Translations under genes and position numbers: made by a program
Source: Eutreptiella sp. 'Long Island Sound 2002'
Taxonomy: Eukaryota > Protista > Euglenida
Direction of reading: 5' to 3'
DNA length: 64,000 bases
NCBI GenBank assembly: GCA_964036045.1
Contig: OZ038379.1
Span: 23,994,001 to 24,058,000, forward strand
Shown here: in pieces, positions 7,018-57,547 of the stretch
How the letters are laid out: each line of letters starts with the position of its first letter
How positions within the stretch are numbered: the stretch's first letter is position 1
The notes under the pieces: model-generated
Told to the model about the DNA's origin: nothing
What the model saw: the letters and a program-made list of their open reading frames with translations, nothing else
The model's database searches: none

Positions 7018-7165
7018 CTTCTGTCAGCGCAAAAGCGTGGGGTGGAGTACACATAATGTCTGGTCCCATTTTCGCATTCCCAAAAGCTTGCGGGACGTGC
7101 AAAGTGGAGTATACATAACGTCTGGTCCCTTTTTTGCATTCCCAAAAGCTTGCGGGACGTGCAAA
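7018..7165 (-). promoter_or_regulatory. Putative 3' splice / trans-splice acceptor just upstream of the ATG, with a 62-bp tandem duplication
   Basis: Minus strand reads ...ctccaccccacgcttttgcgctgacAG aag ATG (AG at 7022-7021). Two near-identical 62-bp units start at 7042 and 7104 (gtggagta..cataa..tctggtccc..gcattcccaaaagcttgcgggacgtgcaaa). The acceptor role is inferred. Confidence 0.4.
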
Positions 7166-37400: not shown

Positions 37401-38934
37401 TCCCTCATGTGCAAGCTACTTTTGTGGATTAGAACAAAGATTTGGCAGATGCGCATACACAAAAGATTGTAAGGACGGGGCAAGGCCACGTAGTGTGCCA
37501 GCAAGGACAAAGCTGCCGATTCTCACACCCTGTCAGCGACACTCTCATTCGGAAGCGACATCGCACCACAAATTGATATTGCTGAAAGTCAGTTGGCAAT
37601 TTCGGTACCCGCTGGTGTTTGGCTACGGTAGTAAAATGCTGGAACAATATATTTACATCCGTAGTGGGCAATACCGGCCGAACAATGCTGCATGTACGGT
37701 TGATGGCACGTTTAATATTACGCAATGTTGCCTGCATTTCAAGATTAGGTGGCAACCCGTTGGTGCCCGCAATCTTCGTAGAGAGTTCTTGATCTATGGG
37801 GGCGCCTTACTACAAGAACACGTCACGCACCGTGTCTTCTCCAGCTAAGTACAAACCACACAAGCCTCTTTCCCCCCGCTGCCACCAATGTCAATGGTGT
37901 GGCGCAAAGAGAAATTTGAAGGCCAATGGTGACCTTTCTGCAGTCTAGAGCACTGCGAAAGCGGACAAGAACAAGACAGGGGCACACTGTGAATGCATTC
38001 AGCTTATTAGCTCTCTTCTTCACTAGGCATGCACCGTAGTCAACCTTGGCCGTTTCAAGCACATTTCAAAAACCCAATAGTTTTAGGGGTGTTGCTTGCC
38101 CAAGCAATGCATTACAAAAACCCAATAGTTTTAGGGGTGTTGCTTGCCCAAGGAATGAGGATGCTCTCCATGTCCACCGGAGACGCTTTGATCTTCACCT
38201 TTCGATGGTTTTTGGGGATGGTGCCCTCACAAAAAATGGTCGGTCCTAGGGACCATTGCTGGTGAGTGTTTGAAGATCGGCCCTTACGGTCAAATCCTGC
38301 AGCACCAGGGAGCACGGGCTCCCGGCGGCAGTCCCCCGGGTCCGTGAGGGGGTGACGGGAAATGGGGCCGACGATGGGCATACGCTGTGGCAAAGAGTTA
38401 CCCCCTCCCAAGTCCCCCGCGCGCCCGAGGCCCTAAGCCGCAGAGTGCAGCGGTGGAAAGGAACGAGAGGGAAACAAATTTGGGACTCAATTTGATGTGT
38501 TCAATTCAATGCCGCTCTGCCAATAGCGCCATTGTCCGGAATTCCTACTATTGTAAATTGACAATGTGTCTCATCCTCTCCTGGCCAAAACCCGCACGAG
38601 ACACACCACCAGTCTTCCACAAAATGCTGCCACATGTCGCGAGAAGTGCAGTGTAGTTTTGGATAGCCTTCATGAAACGTGTGCATGCATGTGCAACGAT
38701 TGTTGTCCAATGGAGTTGCCAAAACAAGGGGTGCACAGGCATAGGCGACGGTACAGACGTCTGCTTGTGGGTACGGTCCACGTAGACCTCGCACCCTACT
38801 GCAGGCTACCGACCCCAGCCAGGAGGCACATCGCATGGAGATGCACACTTCCTAGTGGAGATACATACTTCTTTTGCACGCTTTCGCTCTCCCATACCTG
38901 AATTCTACTGAACAACATTTTCTCTTTTGAACCG

Positions 38935-39103
38935 AGGCCCAGGGCTGCCGTAGCGTTGGAGGGCCCGTTCTTCGCCCCGGTGTTTGCCTGGCAGAGCACG
39001 GCCGCCCGGGAGTGCTGCGTCATGTCCAGTGAGCACTGCGAGTTTGGGGCGCGGCCCTGCGCGCTGGCGCAGGGCGTGGAGTGCGGCAGCACAGCCAGCG
39101 AGG
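38935..39103 (+). pseudogene. 169-bp inverted fragment of the kinase-RING1 junction of the gene at 45483-48484
   Basis: Matches the reverse complement of 46151-46319 with about 11 mismatches, many of them C>T or G>A. Translates as PRAAVALEGPFFAPVFAWQSTAARECCVMSSEHCEFGARPCALAQGVECG. Confidence 0.9.
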
Positions 39104-42100
39104 TGACAGGAATAAAAAGCCAATGAAATTGTTTTCCACTCTCGTTGATTGTGGTTGACGCCAAAACTGACCTCCAAACCAAAGCAAGCAACGAGCCAAG
39201 ATCTCTCTCAGTGTATGCTTGAGTTTGTGTGGCAACACTGGGGCCTGCAGCACTGGTGCAGAGTCCGGGCAATCTGCCTGGGAGCCTAATTGCTGCTCAC
39301 CACAGGACTACTGCCAAAAATATAAAAATTCGCCACTTGCTCCTTTATTTTCCCTTGTCCCTTTGCCCTTTTGTGTATGTCCAGCGGCTCACAAGAAAAC
39401 CCTTGGTGACCTGGCCGAGCGCACCACCACTTGGGCTTTGGAGCGCTTGTCCCCCAAACAAACATTGTACCTCTTGTGCTGCCCTAAGCAAAGCCATTGG
39501 CACTCTGAAGGGACATGGGCATGAAGATGATGTGGCGGTCAGGTTGACGTGAGTACGCTCGCAGTACAGCGGTCAATGGCCATCCAAGGAGCCCCCGCCC
39601 CCCGTTCACCCATCCTCAGGCTGCCTTTATCGTGCAGGCCCCCCGCCCCTCTCCAGAGTGCAGGCTACACTGCCTGTCTACCCACATGGACTGTCTGACC
39701 TGACGTGGCGTGTACCGCATGTACGCACCGACTTGTCCCTGGGCCTCCCAGGTTCACTCCCCTGTTTGGATGTGTGAACGTGCCAATGCGCGTGCAGACC
39801 CATCGAGGCTCCTCGGACCCCCTTCCCCCCCCGGATTTATACCTCAAACCTACGTGGTCAAGCTCCGGCCCCCTGCCCCCATGACCTTCCCCTGGCTCAT
39901 CTACCCCCTGCCTTGCGAGAGCAACGCCCTTGTCAGAGCAACAGTGGGTGTTGTTTCTGGAACTTTTGGGGCCGTGGAATTGGGCGGTTCCTGTTTCTGG
40001 TGGTCCATGAAGATCACATTTTTGCGGTGATTTGAGGCTGGGGGATGGTATTCTAGGGATATTCAATACTTTTAAAACAAGACATGCCAGTAGTGTCCGG
40101 CAGGGGAGCTGAGTTCCGTTAGGAATCAGCCCCGTACCATGTGCCACTCAGTAATATCTGCTCCTGTCGCACCCGGGGCTCAGTAGGAACCAGCCGCGCC
40201 CTGTGTCGGACTCAGTAGGACCCAGCGCCATCTGATATCGGTTGCTATCCTGCCACCCACTTTCGCCTCCTTCTTGTCCTTTGGGGGTGGAGATTGGGGA
40301 ATCACCTGACGACTAGTACATTCGTGATGCAATAGTCACCGCTTGTGACCCCCTTGTCAGAGCAACAGCAGGTGTTGTTTCCGTCAAATCTTGGAACTTT
40401 AGTGTTGCTCTCGCCAGGGGGTGGGGGTAAGAATGTCCGTGTCCGCACTTTCGGCGTGTCCTTGGCTTTGAGGACAATATATTTCTTTTGTTTGCTCACG
40501 CTTCAGACACAAAGTCACGGTCCAATGGCGAAGACCAAGGAAAGCCCGCCATCCGTGTCCGACACCAGACACCCCGTCGGGTCCCAGTAGCTGCTGAGGT
40601 GTACCATGCGGACCCCTTCTCCTCTTCAATCAGGTGTCGTGAGGCTAAGGTACTGATCAGTAATGGAAGGATGCACGCATTATTACCCCCCCCCCCTTGT
40701 ATAAGCTACGCCCTTGTCCAAGCTACAGTAGGCGTAGAGACCGTATTAATTTGGGGCCTAATTTTAATTCGGTACCAAACGTAGTGCAGCCGCATAAGGC
40801 ATGGGTTTGGTGACGGATTTGCGAGTCACATAGAGTCATGGACACATTTGTTGTGAGTGTTTGCCATTTGAACCCAGCTAGCTCTGATTTTTGGGATGTT
40901 TGTGCATTATCACTTCCAACTTTGGCTCAATCAGTGGCCGAGCTAGGGCTGTTCACAAGTCTATCAAGTCAATGTCATTCCATAATGGTGCCTTGCTCAC
41001 GGAATTCCACCAAGGATACGATTCTTCCTTTGACCCATTGTATCTCCCCAAATTCAGCTTGGTTGCACGTGAGGCACGACCCAACAGTTTTCTGATTGGC
41101 TGCATCTCATGGGGATTGACTATAAGAGGCATGTTCGTCACTGTCTTCTCTATGACAGGCGATCCGCACTATATCGTGACCGCGGCAACAGGCACACATA
41201 CATCTCGTTGGGCAAACAATATTGTTGGTGATGTCATATCCGGCAATGCTGGCCACCGTTGCTCAGTGTGCAAGAACGGCTCGACACCACATAAAGCAAC
41301 CTGATTCTGCACGCCAATACCACCGACAGCAACAAGACTATGTGGCATTGCACACCGTCCAAACAGACGACGCTTGGGAGTGCCTATGCGGGGCAGAGCC
41401 ACTCAGCGGCATTCTCCTCCATCTTTCATATGCTCCATGACCTCTCCATTGTTCACGTCGCGTATGGTTCCAAACAAGCGAGGGCCCACAACCAAGAGGC
41501 CAAGGTCACCAGGGTTATCGCCATTCACAACCAGGAATGGGCAAACGGGGGTCCATTCCACAAAACCTAACATCACCTCTAGAATCTCCAGAAAGCGCTG
41601 GGGACCCCTTCTTGTGCTTGCTATGATATGCTCATTCCATACTATCATCGATTCTGAAATCACGGGCGGCGCTCTGAGCGACTTTGCTCTCGCGGGCACG
41701 CTACATCGTCCTCCATGTACTCTACATCGTGTTATCCCGCTTTTCTCGTTCTGAAAAGTACAACCTATGCCATAGAATCTGCGCATCTCACGGATTTTCA
41801 CAAGAATCAACAAGGTTGAGTCTCAATTCGTGCTAAATGAAGGGAGTGAAGTGTTCACAAAGATTGAAAACAAGGACAAGTGTGGTCTATAGGTCCTCAG
41901 GGAACAGAAAACATCAGCGCCGACAAGGTCAGGCTAAGCCGTAAACAGATCTGGAGGGAATGAGGAGGGATAATGACTAAGCAAACCTAGATACAAGACG
42001 TTTTGCCGCCGATGAAGCTTCAATGAAGCGGAATGTCTGAGAGCGAAACAACTACTGGCCTTGTGGTGTAGGTAAAATAATTCCCATAGTTTGTCTTTCT

Positions 42101-42618
42101 TGGGGTTCCGAGCTTTCCTCTTGAGCATATAGAAGTCGCATCGGATCCACACCGACAATTTCGTCCATTGGACCCCCATGCACTCCAGTGATAGGTCGAA
42201 GCGCAAGCGGTGTGACAGCTGGTGTACAGGGACAAGTAAGCAGAGAATGAGCTGCTGCGGGTTAATTGGTGTCCACCATCATCATCATCATCATCACCAT
42301 CCTCATTGCCAGAGTTCCCCAATCTATCTGTCGCCCGCCCCCTCCAAGGACTCACGTCCATAGCTGGCAAGCACTATCGATGTGCTTGGTACCGGACCGG
42401 GTTGTTGCAACGCCGAAGCATGGCTCGAGCTCCGTGGATGGTAGCTTCCATGAGGCGCGGGGGGGGGGGGGGCTGTGGGGACGTGACGCGTGAGGGCTAT
42501 CAAGACATCATCTCAAACACGAACCGGGCTCACCAAGGTTTGCAACGTCTTACCAAAGATGTCATTCAAATGCTCAACAGGTAGTACAACTTGAATGGAA
42601 CCTAGGAATTGTAGGGTA

Positions 42619-44162
42619 CAGTGCCACTGCTCCAGGAAGAATATGATTATAAGAATATGCAGGCGACAAAAAATCCAAAAATTTTAAGAATATGTGCAGC
42701 CTAGGAATTTCGCCCGTATTCCATGATTTCATCAACTTGGCATGTGCATGAAACAAGAAGGTCACCCCTACCACCTCAAGGGCGGAGGTACCATGCTCCT
42801 TGTTTCATGCGACATTCACATCCAAAAAAATGCCAACACATGCTACATGCACATGCAAGAAATTGCCAACACATGTATGTCCAATAACTTCCAACTCTTG
42901 TGCGTTTCGTCCTCAAGGGGGAGTGCCTTGCAACAACACCCATTTTCCCTTTGGCCCATATTCCTCCAAGGGAGGCAATGCTTGTTACCACAACACCCCT
43001 TCAAAATTCAGGACATATTCACCCTTGTGGATGCCCGTGTGGTACAATTTTGAAAAACGGCCAATGTCCCACCCCACTTCGCGGCCGTAATCCAATGCAA
43101 TGCACAACTTGAGTTTTTTCAAGTTGTGCATTGCCATGTCCTCAGGGGGTTGGGGGACTATCTCAGCCCATGCGGGCTTCACGAAATGCCCTTGTTGGTC
43201 AACATTCACGGGCCCAAGCACATCCGAACCATCTGATGCCCCATCCGAATCAACCTCATCCACCTCATTCTCATCATCACCGCCTTCCTCTTCATTTGCA
43301 TCATCATCTTCCTCTTCATCTTCCTCCTCTTCATCTTCCTCCTCCAAATCACTTTCAGATGGAACATCACCACCATCATCCAAGCTGAAAGTGTACTCCT
43401 CCTCCAAACCTTGGAGCTTAATGTCCTTTTGGTTGGAGAGGTCTTTTGCCAAGCCTGAACCAGTTTTCAGGGCCAACCTGTCAAAATCCATCTTTGCACA
43501 CACGTGGTCCCAAGCATCGCCCAACCACTTTGTCAACAAAATCCTTTTTTCTGAAACAGGGACCTGTCCATTCACTATACGATCATTGTTATCCTCCTCC
43601 TCCAACCACTCATCATATGCCCTGTGCATGTGATTCTTACACATTCTTCCCACCCCTGCATCAATCACAGCAATCTCATCAGTGCATTCTGCTGGTTCTA
43701 AGTGCTGCTTTGTGTTGCACTTACGCCGCAGGAGGCGCCTGAATCGTGCAGTGGTCTGTGCTGACAAGTCGTCGGAAAACAGGCAAACCTCCTCTCGTTG
43801 GTTGATGGACTGCAAGAACGGCTTGAAAACCCGGAGGACCCACTCACATGCAATTTCTTCATTGACCCATGCCTTTTTCTGCCAAAACACTACAACTCTG
43901 TTGTCATACTGCCGAGTCTCTACTTTAGGGATTCTTTGCCCAGTGCCCTTGAACACAATCCCTGCCTTTGGCTGCACGCCCCCTTTGGGAATGAATCTGC
44001 AGCAAAGCTGCAGGCTGCAGTCCCTCTTAACATCAGTTCCACTGTTGGGGGGCAACCTGACCCGTGGACCATCCTCCTGACAGTGCAGTGTGACAGGGTC
44101 TTTATTTCCAAAATAGCAGGGCACTTGGTCCACATCATACCCAAGGAGGAGGGGGGCGCCCT
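42619..44162 (-). mobile_element. pogo/Tigger-family transposon, 3' half: DDE_1 catalytic domain, acidic linker, C-terminal barrel-like domain, TIR
   Basis: DDD motifs VDQVP, LFSDDLS and VIDAGV, plus QKKAWV. Open reading from ~44140 to 42985, with one premature TAA before the tail LPPLEEYGPKGKWVLL (ends 42913). TIR TA|CAGTGCCACTGCTCCAGGAAGAAT at 42617-42642 matches the reverse complement of 35551-35577 at 23/27 positions. Confidence 0.88.
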
Positions 44163-45482
44163 GATGTGACTGGTGACTCACAGGAAAGGGAAAGTGTGTG
44201 ATCATCGTGGGTGGCTGGCCTTGAAAAGATCGCCGACCTGTTGGGAGTGGCATCCCAGAAGGAAGGAGGCGTGGTCACTGGGTGCCTTCATGTGCGTGTG
44301 GTGGTACCACCGCAGTTTTCCGGACTTAGACGTGTGCGTGCGTGCGTGCGCGTGTGCGTGCGGCATCAGGAGGTGTGCATGCGTGCGCACGTTCGTGGGG
44401 GCATCAGGAGGATTTTACCCGATCAGCATGTGGTGCTGGAACGGTGTGGCGATTTATAGGCTATTTGTACCGTTGGATTGTGTAAGGGCGGAACAAGTGA
44501 TGTAGAGAGGGTCCATTCAAATTCATAGAAAATTCAACTATGAAGGTCTGGTCGGCTGAGGGATCAGTTGAACGGCCACATTCCGGATCGAAGGGGCTGG
44601 TCGAGGTGCTCCAAAAAAACACCTTTCGAGCGAGCGGTCAAGCAGGGGCGAGTGGCACCACGTTTCCGGGAACAAGGACATGACATCGGGTTTCAGCGGG
44701 TCGGGCACCTGCATACATCCCACGGGCGAAGGCTGCATCGCGAAGGAACTTCAGGTCAGGACTCAGGCGGGGGTGGGTCGGGCGGTCCTGAAGGAGGGTG
44801 ACACCAGAGGTCCCATGTTGAGGGGTGCGGTGTTGTTTTTTTTTGGAGCACCGTGGAAATGTCGACTGTCCTGTTCACAAGAGCCGGGGGCGGGGGCGGG
44901 CGACTGCCTTTGGTTCCTCGGAAGCGGCTGCGACGCTGGAGCGGTAGGCTGAGCGGACGATGTGGATGGCGGAACTGAAAGGAATGGGGTGAACGGTTCT
45001 TTAGGAGCGGGTAGGGGGGGGCGGGGGAGGGGGGGGTGAGTGCAAACCACAGGGGCATACGGGAAAAGCCCTCCATACACCACTCGTCCCAGCCCCCCGC
45101 ACTCCGTGAGCGTCACAATCCACTTCAGAAAGTCGCCCTTGGATGCCAATGCCATGGGAGCACGACGGGGTGCAGCTACTGCCCCCGGGCGGTGAGTGCG
45201 GGCTGCCCCGTACTGGCCCCCAGGGGATGGTCCCGGTTGCCTGTGGGGGATGGGGAGGACGCAATGCGCTGGTGTGCACCCGTACAAATACACGTGCAGT
45301 TGTCGGGTCGGATGAGACTGCATCGGCGCAGGCAGAGGGACGGTGCGGATGGATCCTCCGGCAGGGGCGGACCGCTGAGCCATGGCGCGGGTTGGGCGCT
45401 GCCGGGGCCTACCGCTCCCTGCCATCCGCCTTCCCTGCCCTCTTCCTGCCCGTGCGGTCCATGTGGGGGGTGTCAAAGGGCG

Positions 45483-48400
45483 TCACGCCACGCCCAACTC
45501 ACGAAGTTCGGCGTGCAGCTCCTGGCAAACGCGTTGCCGAATGGCAGCGGGCAACTGATCCAGGTACGCCCGCGCCAGCCTTTGACACCGCTGGCGACGG
45601 TGCGCGCTGAAGGCCTCCCAGGGTCGAGGGAACAGACCGTCCACCCCCTGCGGCCTCTCCCGGCAGCGGGCCACATGAGCGTGCGCATCGGACCCACAGT
45701 CCGCGCCACACCACGCGCAGAACGCGCAGGGGCACCTGCTGCATTTCAGGGCGCAGCAGCCATCGAAATCGATGTACGCCTGCCCGCACCGTGGGCAGTG
45801 GGCCGTGAGGACCTCCTCCACGAGATGCTTGCGCGCCTCCCCCGTCTTGCGCTGCTGTTCGTCCATCTGCCTCAGCTTCTCCAGTTCGGCGGCCACCATC
45901 TCTTGGAACCGCTTCTCGTGAGCCTCCACCAGCCGCTGCTCCATCATCCGGATCCGGACCTTCAGGTAGTCTTGGAATAGATCGGACGGCACATGCCCCG
46001 CCACCCGGTCATCCGCAAAGGCGCACCCCTCGCACTCCGACGGGAACTTGGGGCAATGCATCCGGCCCTCGCGCAGCTGCTGGACCCGGACGTCCTCCTT
46101 CAGGAAGGCCCTCACGCACTCCACAAAACAGGCGTCGCACACAAAGTGCGCCTCGCCGGCCGCGCCGCCGCACTCCACGCCCTGCGCCAGCGCGCAGGGC
46201 CGCGCCCCAAACTCGCACTGCTCACTGGACATGACGCAGCACTCCCGCTCGGCCGCGCTCTGCCAGGCAAACACCGGGGCGAAGAACGGGTCCTCCAACG
46301 CCGCGGCAGCCCTGGGCCTGGGCGCAGGCTCGTCGCTGCACAGCCGGTCCGCCAGCCGCGCCCCGTCCTCCTCCAAGCCGACCAGCCCGAGACCCTCCAG
46401 GACCTCCCCAAGGCACCTCAGCACCGCCCCAAGGCTGTACATGTCGCTGGCCGTCGTCGCCCCCGTGTGCAGGAGCTCGGGCGCCGCAAACCCGCGGCTG
46501 AACCCGACCCTCTGCGTGGTGGTGCAGATGTGCGTCACCGACGTCCGGACCGCCAGGTCCACGGCCACATCGAAGTCCGCCAGGCGCACCCGGCCCTTGG
46601 CACACACCAGCACGTTGGAGGGCTTGAGGTCGCTGTGGATGATCCCGATGCCGTGCAGGTGGGCCACTGCCTCGAAGAGCTGCAGTAGGGCGCGCCGCAC
46701 TGACACGGCGTCGGGCCGGCGCGCCGCCAGCCACTGGTCAATGGGCCCCTCGTCGTAATACGGCATCTGGAGGCAAAAAAAGTGGTGGTCGCAGTCGTGG
46801 AAAACCGCCACGACCTCCACGACGTGGGGGTGGGCGGCACGCACCAATCGGCCCGCCTCCTGCAGACATATCTTCAGTCCCCCCTCCGACACAGGGTAGC
46901 ACTTGATCGCAAACTGCTCGGTGCCCAGCGCCGCCTTGTACACTACGTTGCGTGAATGGGTGCCCAGGGGCTGTCTATCATCAAAGTGGTCCAGCCGTCG
47001 GTCCGCTTTCCACAAATGGAGGATGGCCTGCGGGATGCCCAGCCCCATGTACCCCACAACCTCCGGAAACTCGGCCTCGATCTGTGCAACGGCCTTTGTG
47101 GCATCCGTCAGAGCAGACTGCCGTTGCCGCACCGTTCGCTTGGCTGTCTCGAGTGTCTCGACGAGGTCCTCGGTGGGTCTGCCACGGCGCTCGGCGCGTC
47201 TCAACGCAGCCTTTGCATCATCGAACTCCTCTTGGGCATCCAGCAAAGCCTCTTTGGAATCGGCCAGGGCCTTCAGAGGGCCGTCACGCCTTTGTGCATC
47301 CACACCGGGCTTCAGAGCGGCGATCTCCTTCTCCCACCTCTCCAAATGTGGCTCACATGTCTGAGTCAAGAAGGCAATCTCCTGCCGGTATGCAGCCAAT
47401 TCCTTCTGAGACCCCCGCAGAAGGACCTCTGCGGGAAAAAGCGCGACCGGGTCGAACTCCCTTCGATGCCTCAGCTCAGCCTCCATCGCCCCATCTGCCT
47501 CCACCATCAGCCGTCGCAAGCTCTCCATGCCATCCAGCGTCTCGCATGGGATGTCCCTCCGCGGAGGCAGCGCAAAGCAGTCGCACGTGCGCAGCGCGAG
47601 CTGCACAGCCTTCAAAGCCTCATCAGTGGCGTTTGCAATGGCTTCATTGGAACAGTGCTTGACCCACGAGTCATATGCATCAACAACCTTTTGCAGATGG
47701 ATCCCCGGGCACACCTCGAGCCCTTCCGCAGTGGGAGACTGCCAGTGGACTTCAAGATGTGAGCCATGGATCCAAACACTCCGCCGCCCACTGTGAAGAG
47801 CCTCCTGCTCCCATTGCCCGTTCTCAGGGTCCGTGGCACAGCCAAAAACGTGCCACTGACTCCCAAGGCGTGGGCCTATGTCACTCCTGGATGAAGCGCA
47901 CTCGGATACGGCGCTTTGCAACTCGCGCTGCATCTGCTCCAGACGTTGTATGCGCTGCCGTATGCGACCAACCGCCCGCTGGCCCAGGTCATCATTGGCC
48001 TGCGCGACTGAACGTGACACCAGTCCTGCCCCCTGGACAAAATCGCAACGGATCTCCTGCACCTTCCGCCACAGGTCTGCACGGCAGCGATCGCGGCCTC
48101 GCACTAATCCATCGATTGCTTCCTCGACATCGGCAACCGAGGATTTCGGAGGCATTTCCGCCGCTCTTTGGCGGATGCTGCTTTGTTTGCGGGAGAGGCT
48201 CTCACGGTGCCTTTGGAGCTCCATTTCCAATGGCTCGGGGCTCAGAATACGTACCCTATCAGCCCTCAAGGGTACGGCGCACCTTAACCTGTCCACCAAT
48301 GTTAAGAAAGCTGCAGGTATGCCCTGGAGCATGGCACCACCGTCTTGGGGACGCTGTTGTACAACGTCATGGAACTTCCGGTGCAGATGGAACACGGACT

Positions 48401-48484
48401 CTGATGCGGGCACATACCCCCCAGGGATGGTCTGTACTCCTTGTTCAGCAGTGCAGGGGCACGCAAGGCCCTGCATGGGCTCTC
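45483..48484 (-). CDS. Large terminal exon: coiled coil + protein kinase + RING1 + Rcat/RING2 (RBR-like E3 ligase)
   Basis: About 1000 codons open. Kinase motifs FAIK, QEAG, HSDLKPSN, DFD, GFAAPE and DMYSLG. RING1-like C..C..HFVCDAC..CPKFPSEC. Rcat-like CPRCGQAYIDFDGCCALKCSRCPCAFCAWC. Phase-1 acceptor catctgcttttAG|GA at 48486-48485 (alternative at 48441-48440); first ATG at 48476. Confidence 0.9.
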
Positions 48485-48928
48485 CTAAAAGCAGATGGTG
48501 CGAACCATGTAAGGCACAAGGGGGACCCAGGAGTCTAGCCCAGCATGGGCCTGTACCACGAGCACAGGACACCCCAAACAGTCCAGTCCACAACCCCACC
48601 CCAAAACCCGGATACTTGTGACTGGTGCTTGTGCCAGCCGGTCGGGGGGGGGGGGGGTTCCTGCCGGGGGTCAGGGGTCGGGGGGGGGGTTCCTGCCGGG
48701 GGTCGGGGGGGGGTCTGGCCGGGGGGTCAGGGGGGGCGTCCAGCCAGGGGTGAGGAGGGGGGGGTTAGGGTTAGGGTTAAGGGTAGGGTTAGGGTTGGCC
48801 CTAGGGTTAGGGTTAGGGTTAGGGGTTAGGTAGGGGTTAGGAGTTAGGGTTAGGGTCACCGAGCTGGTGGAACCAGTCTTGGTTTTATAACCCTTTTTAG
48901 TGTCTAGGGTGGACCTAACAGGTTTAGC

Positions 48929-48959
<31 letters not shown>

Positions 48960-51900
48960 GCAAGCAAGCAGCACGCGCGAAATGGGCCAAAATCAGAACT
49001 CCGTCGTGGTGCTTTGGATTTGGTTGAAATTTTGGTGCATGATACCTATGGGTGTGAAGTACAATCACACAAAGTTTGAGCAGGAAACTCGACAGTGGCG
49101 GCTGAGAACGGGCGTCGCAAGTGGCGGACCTCAGTTTCAAAAACTGCAGTGTAGGGCCAAAAACAGCCATTTTTGGGCCAAAAAAGCCGTGGAACACATT
49201 CAAAACCGCCAAACGAAGGGAAACGGTGGGTACACTCCACGTGCGGCTTGACTTCCCCGTGTCAACGAGCTCTTTGCGGCCTTCTAACTCCATGATATGT
49301 CCCGGAAACGGCCCAAAAAGGCCCCCAAAAGCTCCAAATGCCGACAGCCACAAACCAAGAATAGGCCATATCTTTGGCTACATGGCTCAAAATGCGATTC
49401 CGAGGGCACCTACTCCACCCGCAACCCCCCACTTTTTGTGGTTTCCACCCCTCAGAATTGCCCAAACGGACGCCTACACCCCAATACCTAGGCCCACTAG
49501 GCTGCAGCAAGCTGCAAGCTCAAGCCCAAACAAGTGGGTGCCCAAATGGGTCAACAGGGTCCAGTAGGGGCAAAAAGATGACTTTTCTCAAAAATGATCC
49601 TACACCATGTGCGACGCTAAAACAAGTGTTTTTGGACCGTTTTGAGCTTGTGGTGGCCCATTATGGTCCTCCGAAAATCCCAAAATGCCTTGAAAATGGG
49701 CTATTTTGGGACCAAAACTGGGTCAAAAATGGGTCAAAAACACATTTTTCCAAATGTCATCCTACACCATTTGGGGTGCACAAACGGGTGAAATGAGCCC
49801 ATTTTGAGCCCATTTTGGGGCATTTTGGCCCCTCACAAGTCCAAAAAGCCTTGAAAGTGGGCCTCGTGGTGATGGGGTTCACTTGCAAGCTAATTTCACT
49901 TTGTCAAGAGCCATGAATGTGTGAATCATTCTTGATGCCCCTCACCAATCATAGTTGATGTTCCCTCCCCCACCAGCTCGGTCCCAATATTTAGTCTTGA
50001 TTAGGGCTAGGGTTGCTGTTAGGGCTTGCAGCCCTCCTGTAGCCCTCCTTCAGGTCAAAAATTTTTCTTGTTGTTTCAACACAAATATGAATTATCTACA
50101 AAATTTTGAGTATTTTGAGTATGAACACATAGTATGAAAAAAAAATTGGCGCCTTCGGCGCCGGACAGTTTTCTCTAGGGACACTTGTTGAGGGCCGACC
50201 CGGCACCACTATCTTTCAAAACCCGGGGGGGGGGGCTGGGGGGGGGTCGCATACAAGGACCCGGCCCGGCTGCCCCCCCGGGGTGCCAGCAGAGAAGGGG
50301 GGCTGTAGGGACTGAGGGGGGCTGCAGGGAGGGTGCAGGGGGTGTAGGGACAATGCAGCGGGGCTGTAGGGGGGGCTGTACAGGAAGGGGGGCGCAGAAG
50401 AGGGCTGTAGGGGGGACTGTGGGAGCGGCTGCAGGGCGGAGGTACAGGGCCTGCAGGGGGGACTGTAGGGGGCAGGGGGGGGGGGCAGAAGAGGGCTGTA
50501 CGGGGGACTGTGGGAGGGGCTGCAGGGCGGAGGTACAGGGGCTGCAGGGGGGGCTGTAGGGGGGCTGTAGAGGAGGTTCCAAGGGGTCTCCAGGGGTCTC
50601 CAGGGGTCTGCAGGGGGGCTGCGGGGGGTTGTATGGTTGTGGGCATATACAATGACATCACATTACAATTGTGCTCGCAATGAATCCAAACTGCCTTCGC
50701 CCACCGGCTGGGGCCCCATCCTGCATGGCAGTGCGTTTGGGTATTGTGTTGCAACTGAACTGCTGCAGCGATGCTCCATTGGGGTGGCGTGACGGAACCC
50801 AGCGACTTTTGTGGTGCAATCCCAAAGGGTAGCCCAAGCCCCTAGCGCCCCTCAAACAGCGTCCTCATTCAGCCCTTATGGCACCCCCTGGCTACCACCG
50901 ATAAATTCATCCGCATCGGGGGAAACTTATGTGACCGAGAACATGGCATAATGACAGGGTACAGGCCATGAAGGCACATGAGCACATGGAGCTGTGCCAA
51001 AGGCCTGGGGCCACACATGACATGCAGCACCTCCGTTTGCCAACGAGGGCCTGGCAGCCGCACGCCATAGCGACCACGACAACACAAAAAGAAAGAGCAG
51101 CAACCCAAGGGTCGGTTGCAGGACACGCTTCATCGGTTTGACGACTCGTGTCTGTTGCGTGACGAGGGGGTCTCGTGAACGTCGCCTGCACAGCGCCCTG
51201 TCGTTTCACTACGCCCCCCCCCCCCCCCTGCGTCGCCATGACGAATGTGCCCGAACTTCGGAGTCCCAGTGTCGCTACGCTGAGGCAAAGCCCTTCTTGA
51301 GACATGCAAGGGCACCCCCACAGTAGGCGAGCCCAACCATCACAGCGCCTGCGCTCCGGATTGTGACGATACCATTGGGATGGCTGATGAACGATTCTTC
51401 TGAATCACCCCCGACCCCACCCCACGCACACACCCTCACTGGGCACTGGCACAGTGGTACGCCTGAGGTCTGTGGGGCCCACGCACTCTCAAATGGGACA
51501 AGGCTGCACTGCCCCCCTCCGAAAGGGGAAGGGGGTGTGAAGAAGCGGATGGCGGAGTTTGGGGCAGGGCTGGGGCCACAGGGGCTGTGCCATTCAACCG
51601 CCTCCGTGCCCGTGGGGATGGGACAGCACCTGATATTGCCTGCACCACCGACAGCGCAGGTGACACTGCCCACAACCCTGGTCCGTCTGTTTCCTTCCAA
51701 GTCTTTGCCAGAGTCGGCAGTGGCAACTCCGTTTCTGCAGAATGTGCCAAGCCCTTATCATTGTTTTCGGCCTTGGAGGCGTTATTACTGACCGACCAAG
51801 ACCCGTTTTGTTTCACATAGCGCAGGTACTTGTCCGGGTCGGACCTCTTTTGGTACAGAACGTGATCATTGTACAACTCGTCCACAGGCACATACACGCC

Positions 51901-54900
51901 GTTGATCACTGACGCATTTGGCCCCTTGGCGCCTGAAAGAGGGAGGGGCAGGGGCAGGGCAGCGAGACACGGCATCGCACTCCGTGTGTGTGTGCCATTG
52001 ATCAGGGGGGGGTCTCTCCGCCCGGCGTTTGGGGCTCCGTCCCGCACGGCCTCCCGCTGCCTTTGGGGCGTGCGTTTCACTTCAACGGCTGCAGTGCCCC
52101 TCCGTTTGGGCGGCGTGACGTGACCCCGGGCCTGTGGTGGTGCTCAGCCCCTGGAAGCGCTGCGATTCGGGAATGCCCTGCTGTCGCTCGGGGGCCGGGC
52201 AGGTACTCTGGCGGTCACGTCATATGGACCCGATCCGCCCAGTGGCAGCCCCCGTGACCTGACGTGTATCAGTACTTGGGAGGGTGCTCGGGGGGGGGGG
52301 GGGGGCTCGGCAGGTTTCCCCGTATCGGTACCGGTCCAGCCTTCCATCGTGAGGGCGGCAGTGCCCTCCCCCCCCCGCCCACCGCCAGCAACGCGTCGCA
52401 GCGTTCAATGAGGTGTGCTGGTGGTAGGGCCCTACAGAAACGCAAAGCCCAAAAAAGCCTTCGTCATGTCTGGACTCTGCTGCATCGATGACTCCCTCCG
52501 CCTCAGGCCCATTGATGTGAGCAATGCCCCGCGCACTGCCTGGGGATCGGACGTCAATATCCTGACCACAAAACCACGGCGCATTGCGTTGCAAGTGTGA
52601 CCAAACTCGACCCGTGACCAAATGGTATGTGACAAAGATGGGCCACATGGTGACGGGCGCGGACCACATGTTCTGGGAACTGCCAAAAGATGGCGCCGGA
52701 TACACAATGCTGAGCACACGACACCGCACATGCCGTGCAATGCACACGGTACGCAGTGGAATGCCTTGCGATGTGTAGACCATTGTTCACATGTATGCAC
52801 CCCCCTCCCCGGCCGCATGATCACGTGTATGTGACACGCCCCCCTGTAAGGCATGTTGACCCTAAGTCCATGGAATCCACTGACTGCTTACCCCTCTCGG
52901 GTACACAGCACGTACGAGGCGCACAGCTCGCAGGCCACATCTCTCTGGGACATCTGTTATACGCCAACGCGGAGCAAATTCGCACTTTTTCGGGGGTTTC
53001 TCAAGTTTTGATCCCATGCACCAAAAATACGTTCCCCAAGGGGGGGGGGGGGGTAGGTGGTCACATGTTTGAGCACAGAGCTGCAAATGGGATGATGCAC
53101 AGGATGGAGCAATGCTCAATGGACCAGCGAATAGACTGAATCCAAGTCATCCAAGTCAACGGCAAATGCACCTCGCCAGAAATTCGGGCTGGGAAACCTT
53201 GTGGGGGTGCTCTTTGTGATCCCAAAAATGGGCTGCAAAAGCAGTGGCCTCAGCAGTGGATAAAATCTGGTGTTCCTTGTGGGGGCATGCAGGTTGCTGT
53301 GAACCGGTTGTACGAGGCTTTTTGGCCTGCCTGCCAGGCTCCTGGGTCACCTTCACCCAATCTGCGTCCCCAGAGCGTGCTCTTTTGCGCACCAAAAGTT
53401 TCTGTGGCGCATCGGGTGAAGCAACAGCGTGAATTTGTATGCGGACATGGTAGCTGCCTGTTGACAAAAAGAGGCAGCAAGCAACACAGGCACTGTCCAA
53501 AACGGACGAAAACCTCAAACATATCGTCAGCACAGCATGCAGACCCAGGGTGTTCCAAATAGCCCTTTTTAATGGCTTTCCCACTACACCACACATAACC
53601 CCCCCCCCTGTGGGACACTCAGGGGGCACAAATGAGGCAACAACGGCACCAACCCCTGAAAAAGCTCCGTGTTGGCGTAAAATCCGACGACCCCAAGAGA
53701 TATGTAGTGCCGCTCAGCCGCTCAACCGCCACCATTTTGGAGGTCCCCCCTCCACAAATCCCTGTGGCACATCTTCTGGAGAATGACATCAGGAGCTCAA
53801 ACACATCCTTCCAATGGGATGTAAGGGGCACCGCTCATTTCCTGAACAGCACGACCAGCCTCACGGCCCCACTCACACAGCGGCAGCAGGGGTCCTGTGC
53901 ATCCCTCAGGAACACCTGCCGACCCCCCCCCCCCCCAGCGGTGCATGCATGTAGCATCATGTCAGGGTACAGGCCGTGGAGGAGGGACAGGCCGTGCCAC
54001 AGGCCTGGGGCCACACACACACACACACACACACACACATGACATGCAGCACCTCCGCTTGCCAACGAGGGCCTGGCGGCCGCACGCCATGGCGGCCACG
54101 ACAACGCACAAAGGAAGAGCCACAGAACAAAGACGCAAATGGGTCGCTTGCAGGACACGCTTCATCGACGTGACGACTGGTGTCTGGTGCCCGTGGGGGG
54201 GCGGACTACAACCGGTCCTGATGCGAGACCTCCCCCAGCTATCTGTCAAAACTTGCGGGGGGGGGGGGGGGGGTCGGCGGGAGGGTGGGGGGGGGGGGGG
54301 GGGGGGGCTGCACGCAACCCACTACCACCACATGCATACCTCAAGGGGGTGTGTGTGTCTGGGGCATGGGGGTATGGAGGTATGTATGGGATAATAGCCA
54401 TAGTCTTTGCCAGGAAGAAAGTCTTAAGGGTCGTAAGGACGAAAGGCATAGTACCCCTCTCAACTGAGCATGGGACAAAAAATGGCACCCACACCGCTAT
54501 CTTTCAAAACGCGGGGGGTGGGGGGGGGGTGGGGTGTGTCGCAGGACCGGGCCCGGCCGCCCCCCCCCCCGGGGTCTGGTGCGTGACGAGGGAGTCTCGT
54601 GAACGTCGCCTGCACAGCGCCCTGTCGTGTCAGTACGCCGGTCCCCCCTTATACGTCGCCGTGACAAAAGGCCCATTTATGTCACCAATGCCCGTGCCTG
54701 GGGATTGGACGTCAGTATCCTGACCACAAAACCACGGCGCATGCCGTGCAATGCACACGGTACGCAGTGGAATACCTTGCGTTCTGTAGACCATTGTTCA
54801 CATGTATGCACCCCCCCCACCCACCCCCCAACCACGTGTATGTGCACACCCCCCTTCAAGGTATGTTGACCCCCGTCCCAAAAAAATATGTGTATGGCCC

Positions 54901-57547
54901 CCCCGCCCAGGCCATATGTAGTACCGCTCAGGCATCAACCGCCAAGGTTTTAAAGGGTTCCCTCCACAAAACCCTGTGGCACATCTTCTGGAGAATGACA
55001 TCAGGAGCTCAAACGCATCCTTCCAATGGGATGTGAGGGGCACCGCTCACAAGGCACACGGTTTCCTGAACAGCACGACCAGCCTCACCAGCTCGACCAG
55101 CCGCATGCCATAGCGACCACGACAACACAAAAAGAAAGAGCAGCAACCCAAGGGTCATTTGCAGGACACGCTTCATCGGTTTGACGACTCGTGTCTGGTG
55201 CGTGACGAGGGGGTCTCGTGAACGTCGCCTGCACAGCGCCCCGTCGTTTCACTACGCCCCCCCCCCCCTGCGTCGCCATGACGAATGTGCCCGAACTTCG
55301 GAGTCCCAGTGTCGCTGCGCTGAGGCAAAGCCCTTCTTGAGACATGCAAGGGCACCCCCACAGTAGGCGAGCCCAACCACCACAGCGCCTGCGCTCCGGA
55401 TTGTGACGATACCATTGGGATGGCTGATGAACGATTCTTCTGAATCACCCCCGGCCCCACCCCACGCACACACCCTCACTGGGCACTGGCACAGTGGTAC
55501 GCCTGAGGTCTGTGGGGCCCGCGCACTCTCAAATGGGACAAGGCTGCACTGCCCCCCTCCGAAAGGGGAAGGGGGTGTGAAGAAGCGGATGGCGGAGTTT
55601 GGGGCAGGGCTGGGGCCACAGGGGCTGTGCCATTCAACCGCCTCCGTGCCCGTGGGGATGGGACAGCACCTGATATTACAACGGCCGTGGCCTGTACCAC
55701 CGACATCGCAGGTGATACCGCAAATATCGTTCCGTCTGCTTCCTTCCACGTCTTTGCCAGAGTCGGCAGTGGCAAAAACGTTTCTGCACAATGTGCCTTG
55801 CCCGTTTTGTTGTTTGCGTCCTTGTCGGTGCTACGACTGACCGACCAATAGCCGTTTTGTTTCACATAGCGCAGGTACCAGTCCGGGTCAGATCTCTTTT
55901 GGTACAGAACATGATCATTGTACACCTCGTCCACAGGCACATACACGCCGTTGATCACTGACGCATTTGGCCCCTTGGCGCCTGAAAGAGGGAGGGGCAG
56001 GGGCAGGGCAGCGAGACACGGCATCGCACTCCGTGTGTGTGTGCCATTGATCAGGGGGGGGTCTCTCCGCCCGGCGTTTGGGGCTCCGTCCCGCACGGCC
56101 TCCCGCTGCCTTTGGGGCGTGCGTTTCACTTCAACGGCTGCAGTGCCCCTCCGTTTGGGCGGCGTGACGTGACCCCGGGCCTGTGGTGGTGCTCAGCCCC
56201 TGGAAGCGCTGCGATTCGGGAATGCCCTGCTGTCGCTCGGGGGCCGGGCAGGTACTCTGGCGGTCACGTCACATGGACCCGATCCGCCCAGTGGCAGCCC
56301 CCGTGACCTGACGTGTATCAGTACTTGGGAGGGTGCGCGGGGGGGGGGGGGGGTCGGCAGGTTTCCCCGTATCGTTACCGGTCCAGCCTTCCATCGCGAG
56401 GGCGGCGGTGCCCTCTCCCCCCCCCCACCCACCGCCAGCAACGCGTCACAGCGTTCAATGAGGTGTGCTGGTGGAAGGGCCCTACAGAAACGCAAACCCA
56501 AAAAGCCTTCGAGATGCACAGCTCGCACACCATATGTAGTACCGCTCAGCTTTCGCCGCCAGCGTTTGGGAGGTCCCCCTCCACAAAACCCTGTGGCACA
56601 TGTTCTGTAAGGGGGGCACCGCTCACGAGGCACACGGTTTCCTGAACAGCACAACGAGCCCCACGGCCCCACTCACACAGCGGCAGCAGGGGTCCTGTGC
56701 ATCCCTCAGGAACACCTGCCGAGCCCCCCCCCCCCCCCCCCCGGCGGTGCATGCATGCAGCATCATGTCAGGGTACAGGCCGTGGAGGAGGGACAGGCCG
56801 TGCCACAGGCCTGGGGCCACACACACACACACACACACATACGACATGCAGCACCTCCGTTTGCCAACGAGGGCCTGGCAGCCACACGCCATGGCGACCA
56901 CGACAACGCACAAAGGAAGAGCACCAACACAAGGGTCGGTTGCAGGACATGTGTCTGTTGCTTCACGACATGCGGGAACCCGAACACTGATGACCCAGCC
57001 CAACCACCAAAAGACCCCAGGGGCAGATGCGGGGCTGCAGTGACAACACACCGCCACGCTGACATACAGCCCATCTCTAGTCCACCAATCAACCCCACCG
57101 CCCTGTGGTCTGGTCATTGGGCCCCAAATGGCGCTGTCTGCGGCAGAGTCGGGTGTTCAAAGGAAAAAGGCCCACCGTCCGGTACACCCCACCGCAAGAC
57201 GTTGAAGATAGTTGACACTTGGTACAAAAAAGACAGTGGCTGTAGGTCCACAAATGGCAGTTTGCGGGTAACCGACAGCTGCCGGTTAACCGGCGGCGGT
57301 TTGCAAATACCCAGCGTCAGGCCATCGTCCGTGGCTGGGTAAGCGTTGGCGCTGTGGCGAAAATTGTTAAAACCCCGAAAAAAAAAGAAAATGCCATGGA
57401 TTGCGGCACCGGCTGAGGAAGAATGGGGTATATGTTCTGGCGAGTCTGGGTTGCTGTCTGCGTCTGCGGAGGCGGCACCTGTGATCACAACGCATTCCGT
57501 CGGATCCACCAGCGGCATGCTCTCACCGTGTAAGAGGCATTCGGGTG
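45483..57547 (-). CDS. Inferred spliced gene: [small exon]-[variable repeat domain]x2-kinase-RBR-like; 5' end not found
   Basis: Exons 57547-57479 (69 nt), 55981-55670 (312 nt), 51932-51630 (303 nt) and 48484-45483 all have phase-1 boundaries and GT-AG introns. The joins read VVIT-G-AKGPNASVINGVYVP..., VVIS-G-AKGPNAS... and IS-G-EPMQ...IPGGYVPASE, the last echoing INGVYVPVDE. Confidence 0.6.
48765..48855 (+). repeat. Interstitial telomere-like (TTAGGG)n tract, degenerate
   Basis: About 14 perfect or variant TTAGGG units, preceded by G-run repeats (gggggttcctgccggggg) at ~48645-48730. Confidence 0.85.
48900..49900 (+). repeat. Interspersed non-coding repeat element (caagcaagc head), intronic
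   Basis: Microsatellite head at 48928-48972; related to 22985-23300; no credible ORF. Confidence 0.5.
50290..50630. repeat. G-rich degenerate tandem repeat (gggggctg(c/t)aggg)
   Basis: Recurrent ggggctgtag / ggggctgcag units separated by G runs. Confidence 0.65.
51055..52463. repeat. Segmental duplication unit A (paralogous to 55097-56511)
   Basis: Near-identical flanks around a diverged exon; offset ~4040-4049 bp. Confidence 0.92.
51630..51932 (-). CDS. Repeat-domain exon A (unnamed ~100-aa, probably beta-rich domain)
   Basis: Acceptor ccctctttcAG|GC; donor TCA G|GTGCTG; 303 nt, no stops: AKGPNASVINGVYVPVDELYNDHVLYQKRSDPDKYLRYVKQNGSWSVS...WKETDGPGLWAVSPALSVVQAIS. Confidence 0.75.
55097..56511. 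repeat. Segmental duplication unit B (paralogous to 51055-52463)
   Basis: About 6 substitutions in ~500 bp on one side of the exon and about 2 in ~350 bp on the other, relative to unit A. Confidence 0.92.
55670..55981 (-). CDS. Repeat-domain exon B (paralog of exon A)
   Basis: Same splice sites as exon A; 312 nt, no stops: AKGPNASVINGVYVPVDEVYNDHVLYQKRSDPDWYLRYVKQNGYWSVSRSTDKDANNKTGKAHC...IFAVSPAMSVVQATAVVIS. Confidence 0.75.
57479..57547 (-). CDS. Small phase 1-1 exon supplying the first strand (VVITG) of the repeat domain
   Basis: Acceptor tgtcctcctcaAG|CA; donor ACA G|GTGCCG; encodes (A)PECLLHGESMPLVDPTECVVIT(G). Confidence 0.55.

What the first reader, a model, noticed from the sequence alone, without database searches (positions are those of the whole stretch)
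45483..57547. Candidate receptor-like modular protein: variable repeat domains + kinase + RBR-type ubiquitin ligase
Seen: four minus-strand exons with compatible phase-1 GT-AG junctions. The small exon ends VVIT-G and each repeat exon ends VIS-G or AIS-G, so the domain start is split across exons. The big exon begins with an echo of the repeat (IPGGYVPASE vs INGVYVPVDE). Inference: a single ~1200+ aa cytosolic protein couples variable sensor domains to phosphorylation and ubiquitination outputs. I do not recognise this architecture as a named family, and it could be a protist innate-defence or self/non-self system.
Basis: inference. Interest (0 to 1): 0.8.

Follow-up and report, generated by a model that had tools for sequence, protein, structure and literature searches.

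The report
Variable-domain kinase ubiquitin-ligase gene, euglenid
This euglenid alga carries several copies of a gene that most likely joins fast-evolving binding domains to a protein kinase and an unusual ubiquitin ligase, the layout expected of a cytoplasmic sensor, but no RNA evidence yet shows that the pieces are spliced into one message.

Summary
Four minus-strand coding blocks have canonical, phase-1-compatible GT-AG junctions (57479|55981, 55670|51932, 51630|48484).

- **Big exon.** It encodes a helical region, a Ser/Thr kinase (Pfam E 5e-28) and a Cys-rich end. Fold search, a profile search and language-model features all place that end with RBR ligases. It has RING1, a 60-residue helix and an Rcat domain with a candidate catalytic Cys, but no IBR/BRcat.
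- **Wider family.** This helical-kinase-RING1/Rcat core is an undescribed protist family (euglenids, Chromera, Hondaea). Its N-terminal modules vary: LRR, ankyrin, SH3-like, Gly-rich.
- **Repeat exons.** They belong to a large unnamed family of tandem beta-domains (1368 representative proteins). Elsewhere that domain is fused to FYVE-kinase-PARP.
- **Diversification.** Across 11 copies the flanking introns differ by 2%. The exons differ by 7-18% in nucleotides (22-28% in residues against the distal exon). dN/dS is 3.3 in a variable patch and 0.4-0.6 in the framework.
- **Splicing.** The exon-joined junction (VVIS|G-AKGPNA) reproduces the contiguous inter-repeat junction of homologues.

Splicing onto the kinase exon is inferred, not shown, because no transcripts of this species were available. 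The scan noted the exon/intron contrast before, on this same stretch (s1-216462). Verdict: a new variant of known kinds, and a plausible recognition receptor.

The parts
57479..57518 (-). Exon 1, coding part: M-PLVDPTECVVIT plus the first base of a Gly codon. The donor is CAG|gt. A candidate spliced-leader or cis acceptor (cctttcag|) ends at 57583.
   Evidence: Sequence. The same small ORF lies upstream of the distal repeat exon at C13A, C13C and C180, at 95-98% identity.
55670..55981 (-). Distal repeat exon (312 nt, phase 1-1). It encodes one 103-residue all-beta variable domain.
   Evidence: AlphaFold2 pLDDT 84. The profile finds 1368 representative proteins.
51630..51932 (-). Proximal repeat exon (303 nt, phase 1-1). 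It encodes a second variable domain, about 76-79% identical in residues to the distal one.
45483..48484 (-). Large 3' exon (stop codon at 45483-45485): helical/coiled-coil region, kinase and RING1-helix-Rcat. The alternative acceptor is at 48439. The first in-frame ATG after the acceptor is at 48474-48476.
   Evidence: Four copies are 98-99% identical and all are intact.
46974..48482 (-). Helical region with no Pfam family. Homology to the family core starts about 50 residues after the acceptor.
   Evidence: Conserved in paralogues and in Euglena transcripts.
46410..46973 (-). Protein kinase domain (ORF residues 543-730). K566, E581, HSD D657, N662, DFD D675 and APE are present. The Gly-rich loop is degenerate.
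   Evidence: Pfam PF00069 E 5.1e-28. Motif positions.
46023..46241 (-). RBR-type RING1 (ORF residues 787-859).
   Evidence: VIA-align Z 8.7-7.0 to the RING1 domains of RNF144A, parkin, ARIH2 and HOIP. Invariant Cys and His.
45807..46013 (-). Long linker helix that stands where the IBR/BRcat domain would be. It has no Cys.
   Evidence: Model helix 103-162. Only four His and no Cys in ORF residues 860-934.
45663..45797 (-). Rcat-like two-zinc domain (ORF residues 935-979). The candidate catalytic Cys948 lies at 45756-45758.
   Evidence: The profile hits the CUL9 Rcat at E 0.002, with Cys948 aligned to the catalytic Cys. RNF216 helix-Rcat at Z 6.0. Spacing C-x2-C-x9-C-x4-C.
45495..45620 (-). Conserved C-terminal helices that follow the Rcat domain.

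Best explanation
**Gene model.** This is one copy of a small, recently amplified euglenid gene family. In this copy four exons most likely encode a cytoplasmic protein of about 1,220 residues. Its parts, in order, are:
- a 13-residue leader that supplies the strand preceding the first domain;
- two tandem all-beta domains of about 100 residues, with a conserved framework and a hypervariable patch;
- a helical, probably oligomerising, region of about 500 residues;
- a non-RD Ser/Thr kinase with DFD in place of DFG;
- a C-terminal ubiquitin-ligase module made of an RBR-type RING1, a 60-residue helix and an Rcat domain (candidate catalytic Cys948), with no IBR/BRcat.

**Proposed mechanism (inferred).** The variable domains bind a fast-evolving ligand. 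Binding changes the oligomeric state through the helical region. The kinase autophosphorylates, or phosphorylates the ligase module, and so relieves RBR-type autoinhibition. RING1 recruits E2~Ub, Cys948 takes ubiquitin as a thioester, and ubiquitin passes to a target.

**Shown here:** the domain identities, the family context and diversifying selection.

**Inferred:** the splicing of the repeat exons to the kinase exon, both enzymatic activities, and the sensor role.
For: **Splice sites and phases.**

**Junction match.** The exon-joined junction equals the contiguous inter-repeat junction in homologues.

**Linkage.** Exon 1, repeat exons and the big exon lie in the same order at C2 and at C13A and C13C. 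At C13B one repeat exon lies upstream of the big exon, and its exon 1 region was not fetched.

**Selection.**
- The repeat-exon framework is under purifying selection (dN/dS 0.44-0.57).
- The variable patch is under positive selection (dN/dS 3.3).
- The flanking introns differ by only 2.2%.
- The exons are therefore coding sequence under selection.

**Family core.** Fuller-length relatives of the helical-kinase-RING1/Rcat core carry a binding-type module, or at least extra sequence, upstream of it:
- cold-shock-like motif (seen by eye, no Pfam hit) plus LRR, and LRR alone, in E. gracilis transcripts;
- ankyrin and LRR in Hondaea;
- four SH3-like repeats (weak, sub-threshold Pfam hits) on contig C27;
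- a Gly-rich region on contig C4.
- Homology to that core starts about 50 residues into the big exon here.

**Same domain next to a related kinase.** The repeat domain sits N-terminal to a kinase of the same DFD subtype in FYVE-kinase-PARP proteins of other organisms.

**Kinase.** Pfam E 5e-28, with catalytic residues present.

**Ligase module.**
- Foldseek top hits are RBR ligases: RNF216, RNF144A, HOIL-1, parkin, HOIP and ARIH2.
- VIA-align gives Z 8.7 for RING1 and Z 6.0 for the RNF216 helix-Rcat.
- The profile hits the CUL9 Rcat at E 0.002, aligned on the catalytic Cys.
- The nearest named clusters by Atlas features are RBR/IBR/Rcat_RNF216, at 0.90-0.92.
Against: - No transcript or spliced protein fragment of this gene was found.
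- None of the 270 proteins fetched carries both the repeat domain and the RING1/Rcat module.
- The big exon could stand alone. Its acceptor at 48484 could take a spliced leader, and an ATG follows 8 nt later.
- At C180 the same exon 1 and four repeat exons are followed by only 28 nt of the big exon and then by unrelated sequence.
- The loci on C2 and C13 are recent block duplicates, so their shared order counts as one observation.
- Every ligase hit is weak taken singly (Foldseek E 5e-3, profile E 0.002, no Pfam hit).
- The kinase Gly-rich loop is degenerate.
- The variable-patch boundaries for dN/dS were chosen after seeing the alignment, and the pairs are not independent.
Confidence: 0.55

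Rival explanations
1. There are two transcription units. The helical-kinase-RING1/Rcat exon is a gene of its own. It would be trans-spliced at 48484 and start at the ATG at 48476, giving 997 residues with no N-terminal module. Exon 1 and the repeat exons would belong to another transcript or to a decaying one.
For: - The acceptor is followed almost at once by an in-frame ATG.
- C180 shows the repeat cassette without the kinase exon.
- No spliced product is on record.
- The 'echo' of a repeat at the exon start is not significant.
Against: - The last repeat exon ends in a consensus donor with no stop codon. Read through, it runs 60 or more codons into the intron.
- The phases are compatible, and the junctions reproduce a natural inter-domain junction.
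- Fuller-length relatives have a module or extra sequence upstream of the core.
- The exons are under protein-level selection, so they must be expressed as part of some protein.
Confidence: 0.25
2. It is one gene, but the repeat exons are cassette exons used in varying subsets by skipping or mutually exclusive splicing. One locus would then yield several receptor variants.
For: - All repeat exons are symmetric (phase 1-1) and have near-identical flanking introns and splice sites.
- Any subset therefore keeps the frame.
- The number of repeat exons differs between loci, from 1 to 4.
- A frameshifted copy at C13C would have to be skipped.
Against: - Homologues elsewhere carry 2 to 12 domains in tandem within one protein, so constitutive inclusion is the simpler reading.
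- There are no RNA data.
Confidence: 0.12
3. These are non-functional recent segmental duplicates. The exon/intron contrast would be an artefact of gene conversion or of assembly of collapsed paralogues.
For: - The big-exon copies differ by only about 1%, with dN/dS 0.55-0.95, which gives little power.
- One repeat exon is frameshifted.
- A transposase ORF and rearrangements lie next to the gene.
Against: - Ten of 11 repeat exons and all four big exons are intact.
- Substitutions cluster in a patch with dN/dS 3.3, beside a framework at 0.44. Neutral decay does not produce that pattern.
- Independent ENA assemblies hold the same exon variants.
Confidence: 0.06

Closest known systems
RBR (RING1-BRcat-Rcat) E3 ubiquitin ligases, nearest RNF216/TRIAD3 by fold. 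CUL9, parkin and ARIH1 are nearest for the Rcat by sequence profile.
   Same: - A C-terminal module with an RBR-type RING1, including the 'hCP' seventh ligand.
- A helix leading into a two-zinc domain with the spacing C-x2-C-x9-C-x4-C, whose third Cys aligns with the catalytic Cys.
- As I recall for RNF216, there is no His two residues after that Cys (own knowledge, not tested here).
   Different: - There is no BRcat/IBR. A Cys-free stretch of about 75 residues, mostly one 60-residue helix, takes its place. A 2014 review states that the three domains are always found together (PMC3940038).
- There is no Pfam IBR or Rcat_RNF216 hit.
- It is fused to a kinase.
PINK1-parkin and phospho-regulated RNF216: a kinase that switches on an autoinhibited RBR ligase.
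   Same: A Ser/Thr kinase and an RBR-type ligase would act in one pathway. Phosphorylation is a known RBR activation route. PDB entry 7m4o is a phosphorylated RNF216 (listed). The PINK1-parkin relationship appears in the abstracts listed.
   Different: Here the two enzymes are in one polypeptide. The kinase is not PINK1-like. No Ubl or ubiquitin-binding element was identified. Nothing was tested biochemically.
Protist FYVE-kinase-PARP proteins that carry the same repeat domain (P0126, P0142), and the kinase-PARP family noted elsewhere in this genome (s1-193005).
   Same: - The same ~100-residue repeat domain, in tandem, N-terminal to a kinase of the same DFD subtype with an FPE-type lead-in.
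- Within this genome, the kinase of P0142 matches the kinase-RING1/Rcat genes best.
   Different: The effector is PARP, not RING1/Rcat. A FYVE finger is present. These proteins come from other, unnamed organisms.
Recognition gene families in which the exons outrun the introns or carry hypervariable repeat positions: MHC peptide-binding exons, and fungal HNWD/NLR repeat genes (own knowledge).
   Same: A conserved framework with patches under positive selection, homogenised flanking sequence, and multi-copy clustered loci.
   Different: The domain fold is different and has no solved relative. There is no NACHT or NB-ARC. No ligand or phenotype is known.
Receptor kinases and IRAK/Pelle-type non-RD kinases that work with separate E3 ligases in plant and animal innate immunity (own knowledge).
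   Same: A binding module plus a non-RD kinase (HSD) plus ubiquitin-ligase output.
   Different: The protein is cytoplasmic, with no membrane span. The ligase is fused. The kinase is not shown to belong to that clade.

Membership tests
RBR E3 ubiquitin ligases | N-terminal RING1 with a C3HC4 cross-brace, the E2-binding domain | tested here: met
   Model residues 6-124 align to the RING1 domains of RNF144A, parkin, ARIH2 and HOIP at Z 8.7-6.5. The Cys and His ligands are invariant or nearly so in 19 relatives. E2 binding itself was not tested.
RBR E3 ubiquitin ligases | A BRcat/IBR zinc domain between RING1 and Rcat | tested here: not met
   ORF residues 860-934 hold no Cys and only four His. 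The model shows one helix over residues 103-162. No Pfam IBR hit at E up to 10.
RBR E3 ubiquitin ligases | An Rcat domain with a catalytic Cys that is not a zinc ligand | tested here: met
   Profile A3 hits the CUL9 Rcat (E 0.002), and more weakly the parkin and ARIH1 Rcat/RING2 domains. Cys948 (Cys179 of the fragment) lies on the catalytic Cys. That Cys is invariant in 19 of 19 and 9 of 9 relatives. This is sequence and fold evidence only.
RBR E3 ubiquitin ligases | An E2-to-Cys thioester relay (enzymatic activity) | not testable with these tools
   Needs an in vitro assay with a Cys-reactive E2 such as UbcH7.
RNF216/TRIAD3 subfamily | A match to the subfamily's own Rcat and RING models | tested here: not met
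   No Pfam hit at all in the C-terminal 269 residues. The resemblance is by fold only: Foldseek E 5e-3 and Z 6.0.
Eukaryotic protein kinases (PF00069) | A domain match above the curated cut-off, with the catalytic Lys, Glu, Asp, Asn and metal-binding Asp | tested here: met
   98.6 bits against a cut-off of 31.7. K566, E581, D657, N662 and D675 are present.
Eukaryotic protein kinases (PF00069) | A canonical GxGxxG loop and DFG motif | tested here: not met
   The loop reads G-T-H-S-R-N and DFG is DFD. Related kinases show the same features. Activity is therefore plausible but unproven.
Unnamed protist tandem beta-domain family (profile A1) | A full-length profile match and tandem arrangement with the junction VVI(S/G/A)-G-x-x-GPNA | tested here: met
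   1368 representative proteins at E<=1e-3, with 2-12 copies each. Junctions are shown. ESM Atlas TM 0.75-0.82. No Pfam hit and no PDB relative.
NLR/STAND immune receptors | A central NACHT or NB-ARC NTPase | tested here: not met
   No such Pfam hit in any exon.

The most novel reading that the evidence does not exclude
Euglenids, and perhaps other protists, may have a cytoplasmic recognition system built from hypervariable domain cassettes. Selection would keep those cassettes diverse while gene conversion homogenises their introns. The cassettes would be plugged onto interchangeable enzymatic outputs: a kinase plus an IBR-less RBR ligase here, kinase-PARP in relatives, and possibly an ADP-ribosyltransferase at the C180 locus. 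This would be a protist counterpart of innate immune or allorecognition receptors.
Probability: 0.25. Interest if true: 0.85.

Novelty: new variant of a known kind. Interest (0 to 1): 0.66.

Why it matters
Almost nothing is known about how free-living protists recognise viruses, parasites or non-self. This gene family would give a concrete, testable candidate receptor, because it couples domains under strong diversifying selection to two signalling enzymes. The ligase module would also be an exception to the rule that RING1, BRcat and Rcat always occur together. It could therefore show whether the in-between domain is dispensable for the RBR mechanism. The kinase-ligase fusion is a natural single-chain version of kinase-activated RBR ligases such as PINK1-parkin.

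Tried and rejected
- **Pfam on each exon.** Only the kinase was found. Nothing hit the repeat exons, exon 1 or the C-terminal 269 residues.
- **Single-sequence search of the PDB with the C-terminus.** Only non-significant hits.
- **Fold searches for the repeat domain.** No convincing solved relative: Foldseek E>2, and the best Z of 5.1 is within the noise.
- **Search for transcripts or spliced fragments.**
  - Kinase-ligase region, 550-1750 aa.
  - First 320 residues of the big exon, 176-560 aa: nothing.
  - Repeat exon, 57-180 aa: only four read-through ORF calls of the P0152 kind, three from ENA assemblies and one from this window itself.
  - These blanks are uninformative, because the assembly is not the E. 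gracilis whose transcriptome is public. EG_transcript_598 matches this genome at only 45%.
- **A protein with both the repeat domain and RING1/Rcat.** None among the 270 proteins fetched.
- **The 'echo' of a repeat at the start of the big exon.** Not significant.
- **Literature.** No paper found on kinase-RBR fusions or on this architecture. One search served only for the RBR definition.
- **Earlier notes of the scan.** Nothing by sequence or words that bears on this gene.
- **Fetching more of C13, C180, C1572 and C1184.** One search of the window's own genome failed on the server.
- **The joined four-exon protein.** Not built, searched or folded. All searches were made exon by exon, by reference.
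Full report
**Setting.** Earlier notes of the scan identify the genome as a euglenid alga. It is 2.28 Gb and the window lies on contig C2. It is not the Euglena gracilis of the public transcriptome, because EG_transcript_598 finds nothing better than 45% identity in it.

**Observation.**
- Exon 1 runs from the ATG at 57518 to 57479 and ends VVIT plus one base, with donor CAG|gt.
- The two repeat exons span 55981-55670 and 51932-51630. Each starts after ctctttcag| and ends ATATCAG|gtgctgtccc, in phase 1 at both ends.
- The 1038-codon ORF at 45483-48599 has a good acceptor (cttttag|) at 48484, in the frame a phase-1 junction requires. A poorer acceptor lies at 48439.
- The two repeat exons sit in a 4.05-kb tandem duplication.

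**The large exon.** Pfam finds only a protein kinase, at residues 543-730 (E 5.1e-28).
- The catalytic Lys566, Glu581, Asp657 (in HSD, so a non-RD kinase), Asn662 and Asp675 are present.
- DFG reads DFD, and the Gly-rich loop is degenerate.
- The 500 residues before the kinase are helical and have no family.

**The C-terminal 269 residues.** They have no Pfam hit, but four lines converge on RBR ligases.
- An AlphaFold2 model built on 19 relatives has pLDDT 88. Its top Foldseek hits are almost all RBR ligases: RNF216 (E 5e-3), RNF144A RING1, HOIL-1, parkin, HOIP and ARIH2.
- VIA-align gives Z 8.7-7.0 for residues 6-124 against RBR RING1 domains, and Z 6.0 for residues 137-262 against the helix-Rcat part of RNF216.
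- A profile of nine paralogues hits the CUL9 Rcat at E 0.002, and the parkin and ARIH1 Rcat domains more weakly. The invariant Cys of G-C-x-A-L-x-C (ORF Cys948) lies on the catalytic Cys.
- By language-model features, the nearest named Atlas clusters are RBR/IBR/Rcat_RNF216, at 0.90-0.92.

Between RING1 and Rcat there is no Cys in 75 residues, and the model shows one 60-residue helix. The module is therefore RING1-helix-Rcat with no BRcat/IBR. A 2014 review says the three domains are always found together (PMC3940038).

**Family context.** The helical-kinase-RING1/Rcat core is a real, conserved and undescribed family.
- Members covering 98-100% of the query region come from E. gracilis and E. 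longa transcriptomes and from unnamed environmental eukaryotes. Chromera velia covers 92%, and two Hondaea proteins cover 70-86%.
- Fuller-length members carry different N-terminal modules:
  - a cold-shock-like motif (by eye) plus LRR (EG_transcript_598), and LRR alone (EG_transcript_262);
  - ankyrin or LRR (Hondaea);
  - four SH3-like repeats, with only weak sub-threshold Pfam hits, in a single 1268-codon ORF on C27;
  - a Gly-rich region in the ORF on C4.
- Homology to EG_transcript_598 starts about 50 residues into the big exon here, at residue 442 of that protein.
- The family pattern therefore predicts an N-terminal module upstream of this exon.

**The repeat domain.** The exon encodes an all-beta domain of about 100 residues (pLDDT 84).
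- It has no solved relative.
- It has close predicted look-alikes in haptophyte, diatom and ciliate proteins (TM 0.75-0.82).
- A 13-sequence profile finds 1368 representative proteins at E<=1e-3, usually with 2-12 tandem copies.
- In those proteins, and in one ORF on contig C10, successive domains meet as V(V/T)I(S/G/A)-G-x-x-G-P-N-A. Joining exon 1 to the distal repeat exon, or the distal repeat exon to the proximal one, produces exactly that junction.
- Two long members have six repeats, then FYVE, then a kinase, then PARP. Their kinase shares the DFD motif and the lead-in segment. Within this genome it matches the kinase-RING1/Rcat genes best.
- None of the 270 proteins fetched combines the repeat domain with RING1/Rcat.

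**Copies and selection.**
- The big exon occurs four times at 98-99% identity (C2 and three on C13), and all four copies are intact.
- Each has one or two repeat exons upstream. Exon 1 was seen at C2, C13A and C13C; the C13B exon 1 region was not fetched.
- Contig C180 has exon 1 and four repeat exons.
- Across the 11 repeat-exon copies, the 300 nt of intron on either side are 94-100% identical (mean distance 0.022). The exons are only 82-93% identical in nucleotides for all but two near-identical pairs, and 72-78% in residues against the distal exon.
- Ten of the 11 are open; one, at C13C, is frameshifted.
- dN/dS is 0.44 in the first 33 codons and 0.57 in codons 73-85, but 3.3 in codons 34-72. 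It is 1.3 over the whole exon.
- By contrast the big-exon copies have dS about 0.01 and dN/dS 0.55-0.95.
- The exons are therefore protein-coding and under diversifying selection on a conserved scaffold.
- Caveats: the patch limits were set after seeing the alignment, and the pairs are not independent.

**What is not shown.** No RNA evidence could be obtained.
- The weakest link is the junction 51630|48484. An in-frame ATG lies 8 nt after that acceptor, so a stand-alone, spliced-leader-capped kinase-ligase gene is possible.
- At C180, homology to the big exon stops 28 nt past the acceptor. A coiled-coil ORF and an ART-like ORF follow several kb downstream (Pfam ART E 1.6e-4, just under the cut-off).
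- Everything was done exon by exon.

**Verdict.**
- The most likely reading (0.55) is a single cytoplasmic protein with variable binding domains, a kinase and a thioester-type ubiquitin ligase.
- A defence or self/non-self role is a reasonable but untested inference.

Noticed in passing
L042:9290-9421, L010/L004/L005/L002 (C180:10637-18340) and L043:2233-3528, 6093-7091: Contig C180 carries exon 1 and four repeat exons at 2.5-kb spacing. Homology to the big exon then stops 28 nt past its acceptor. Between 2.5 and 7.3 kb further on lie a coiled-coil ORF and an ORF with a near-threshold NAD:arginine ADP-ribosyltransferase match (E 1.6e-4). The same variable cassette may be attached to a different effector there.
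   Followed up: partly
window 42985-44253 (-) and 40035-44130: A pogo-type DDE_1 transposase ORF (Pfam E 1e-10) lies just downstream of the gene, in a stretch of about 4 kb that the C13 copies lack. Beyond it, the homology to C13 resumes in inverted orientation (window 38685-40034).
   Followed up: partly
window 38935-39103 (+); also L039:932-1100, L040:976-1144, L041:1953-2121: A 169-nt fragment of the big exon (residues 760-816, the kinase/RING1 boundary), 92-93% identical, sits downstream of every gene copy. In this window it is inverted relative to the gene.
   Followed up: no
L011 (C13:3857099-3857368): The proximal repeat exon of copy C13C is 325 nt long and frameshifted after 17 codons. 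It is either a dead exon or one that must be skipped.
   Followed up: partly
G000:C24:13254156-13254497, C8:3200152-3200493, C7:85267705-85268043, C2:3326979-3327323 and others: At least ten further loci encode only the helix-Rcat-C-terminal-helix part (39-48% identical). RING1 and the kinase are absent from the matched ORF. These may be isolated Rcat proteins or exons of other genes.
   Followed up: no
G000:C1184:37257-37460 (-): A weak match of the repeat-domain profile (E 2e-7) lies inside an open frame of 2267 codons. It could not be fetched.
   Followed up: no
window 50387-50597: G-rich tandem repeats with a period of 91 nt lie in intron 3. They give long Pro-rich ORFs on the minus strand that are probably not coding.
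   Followed up: no
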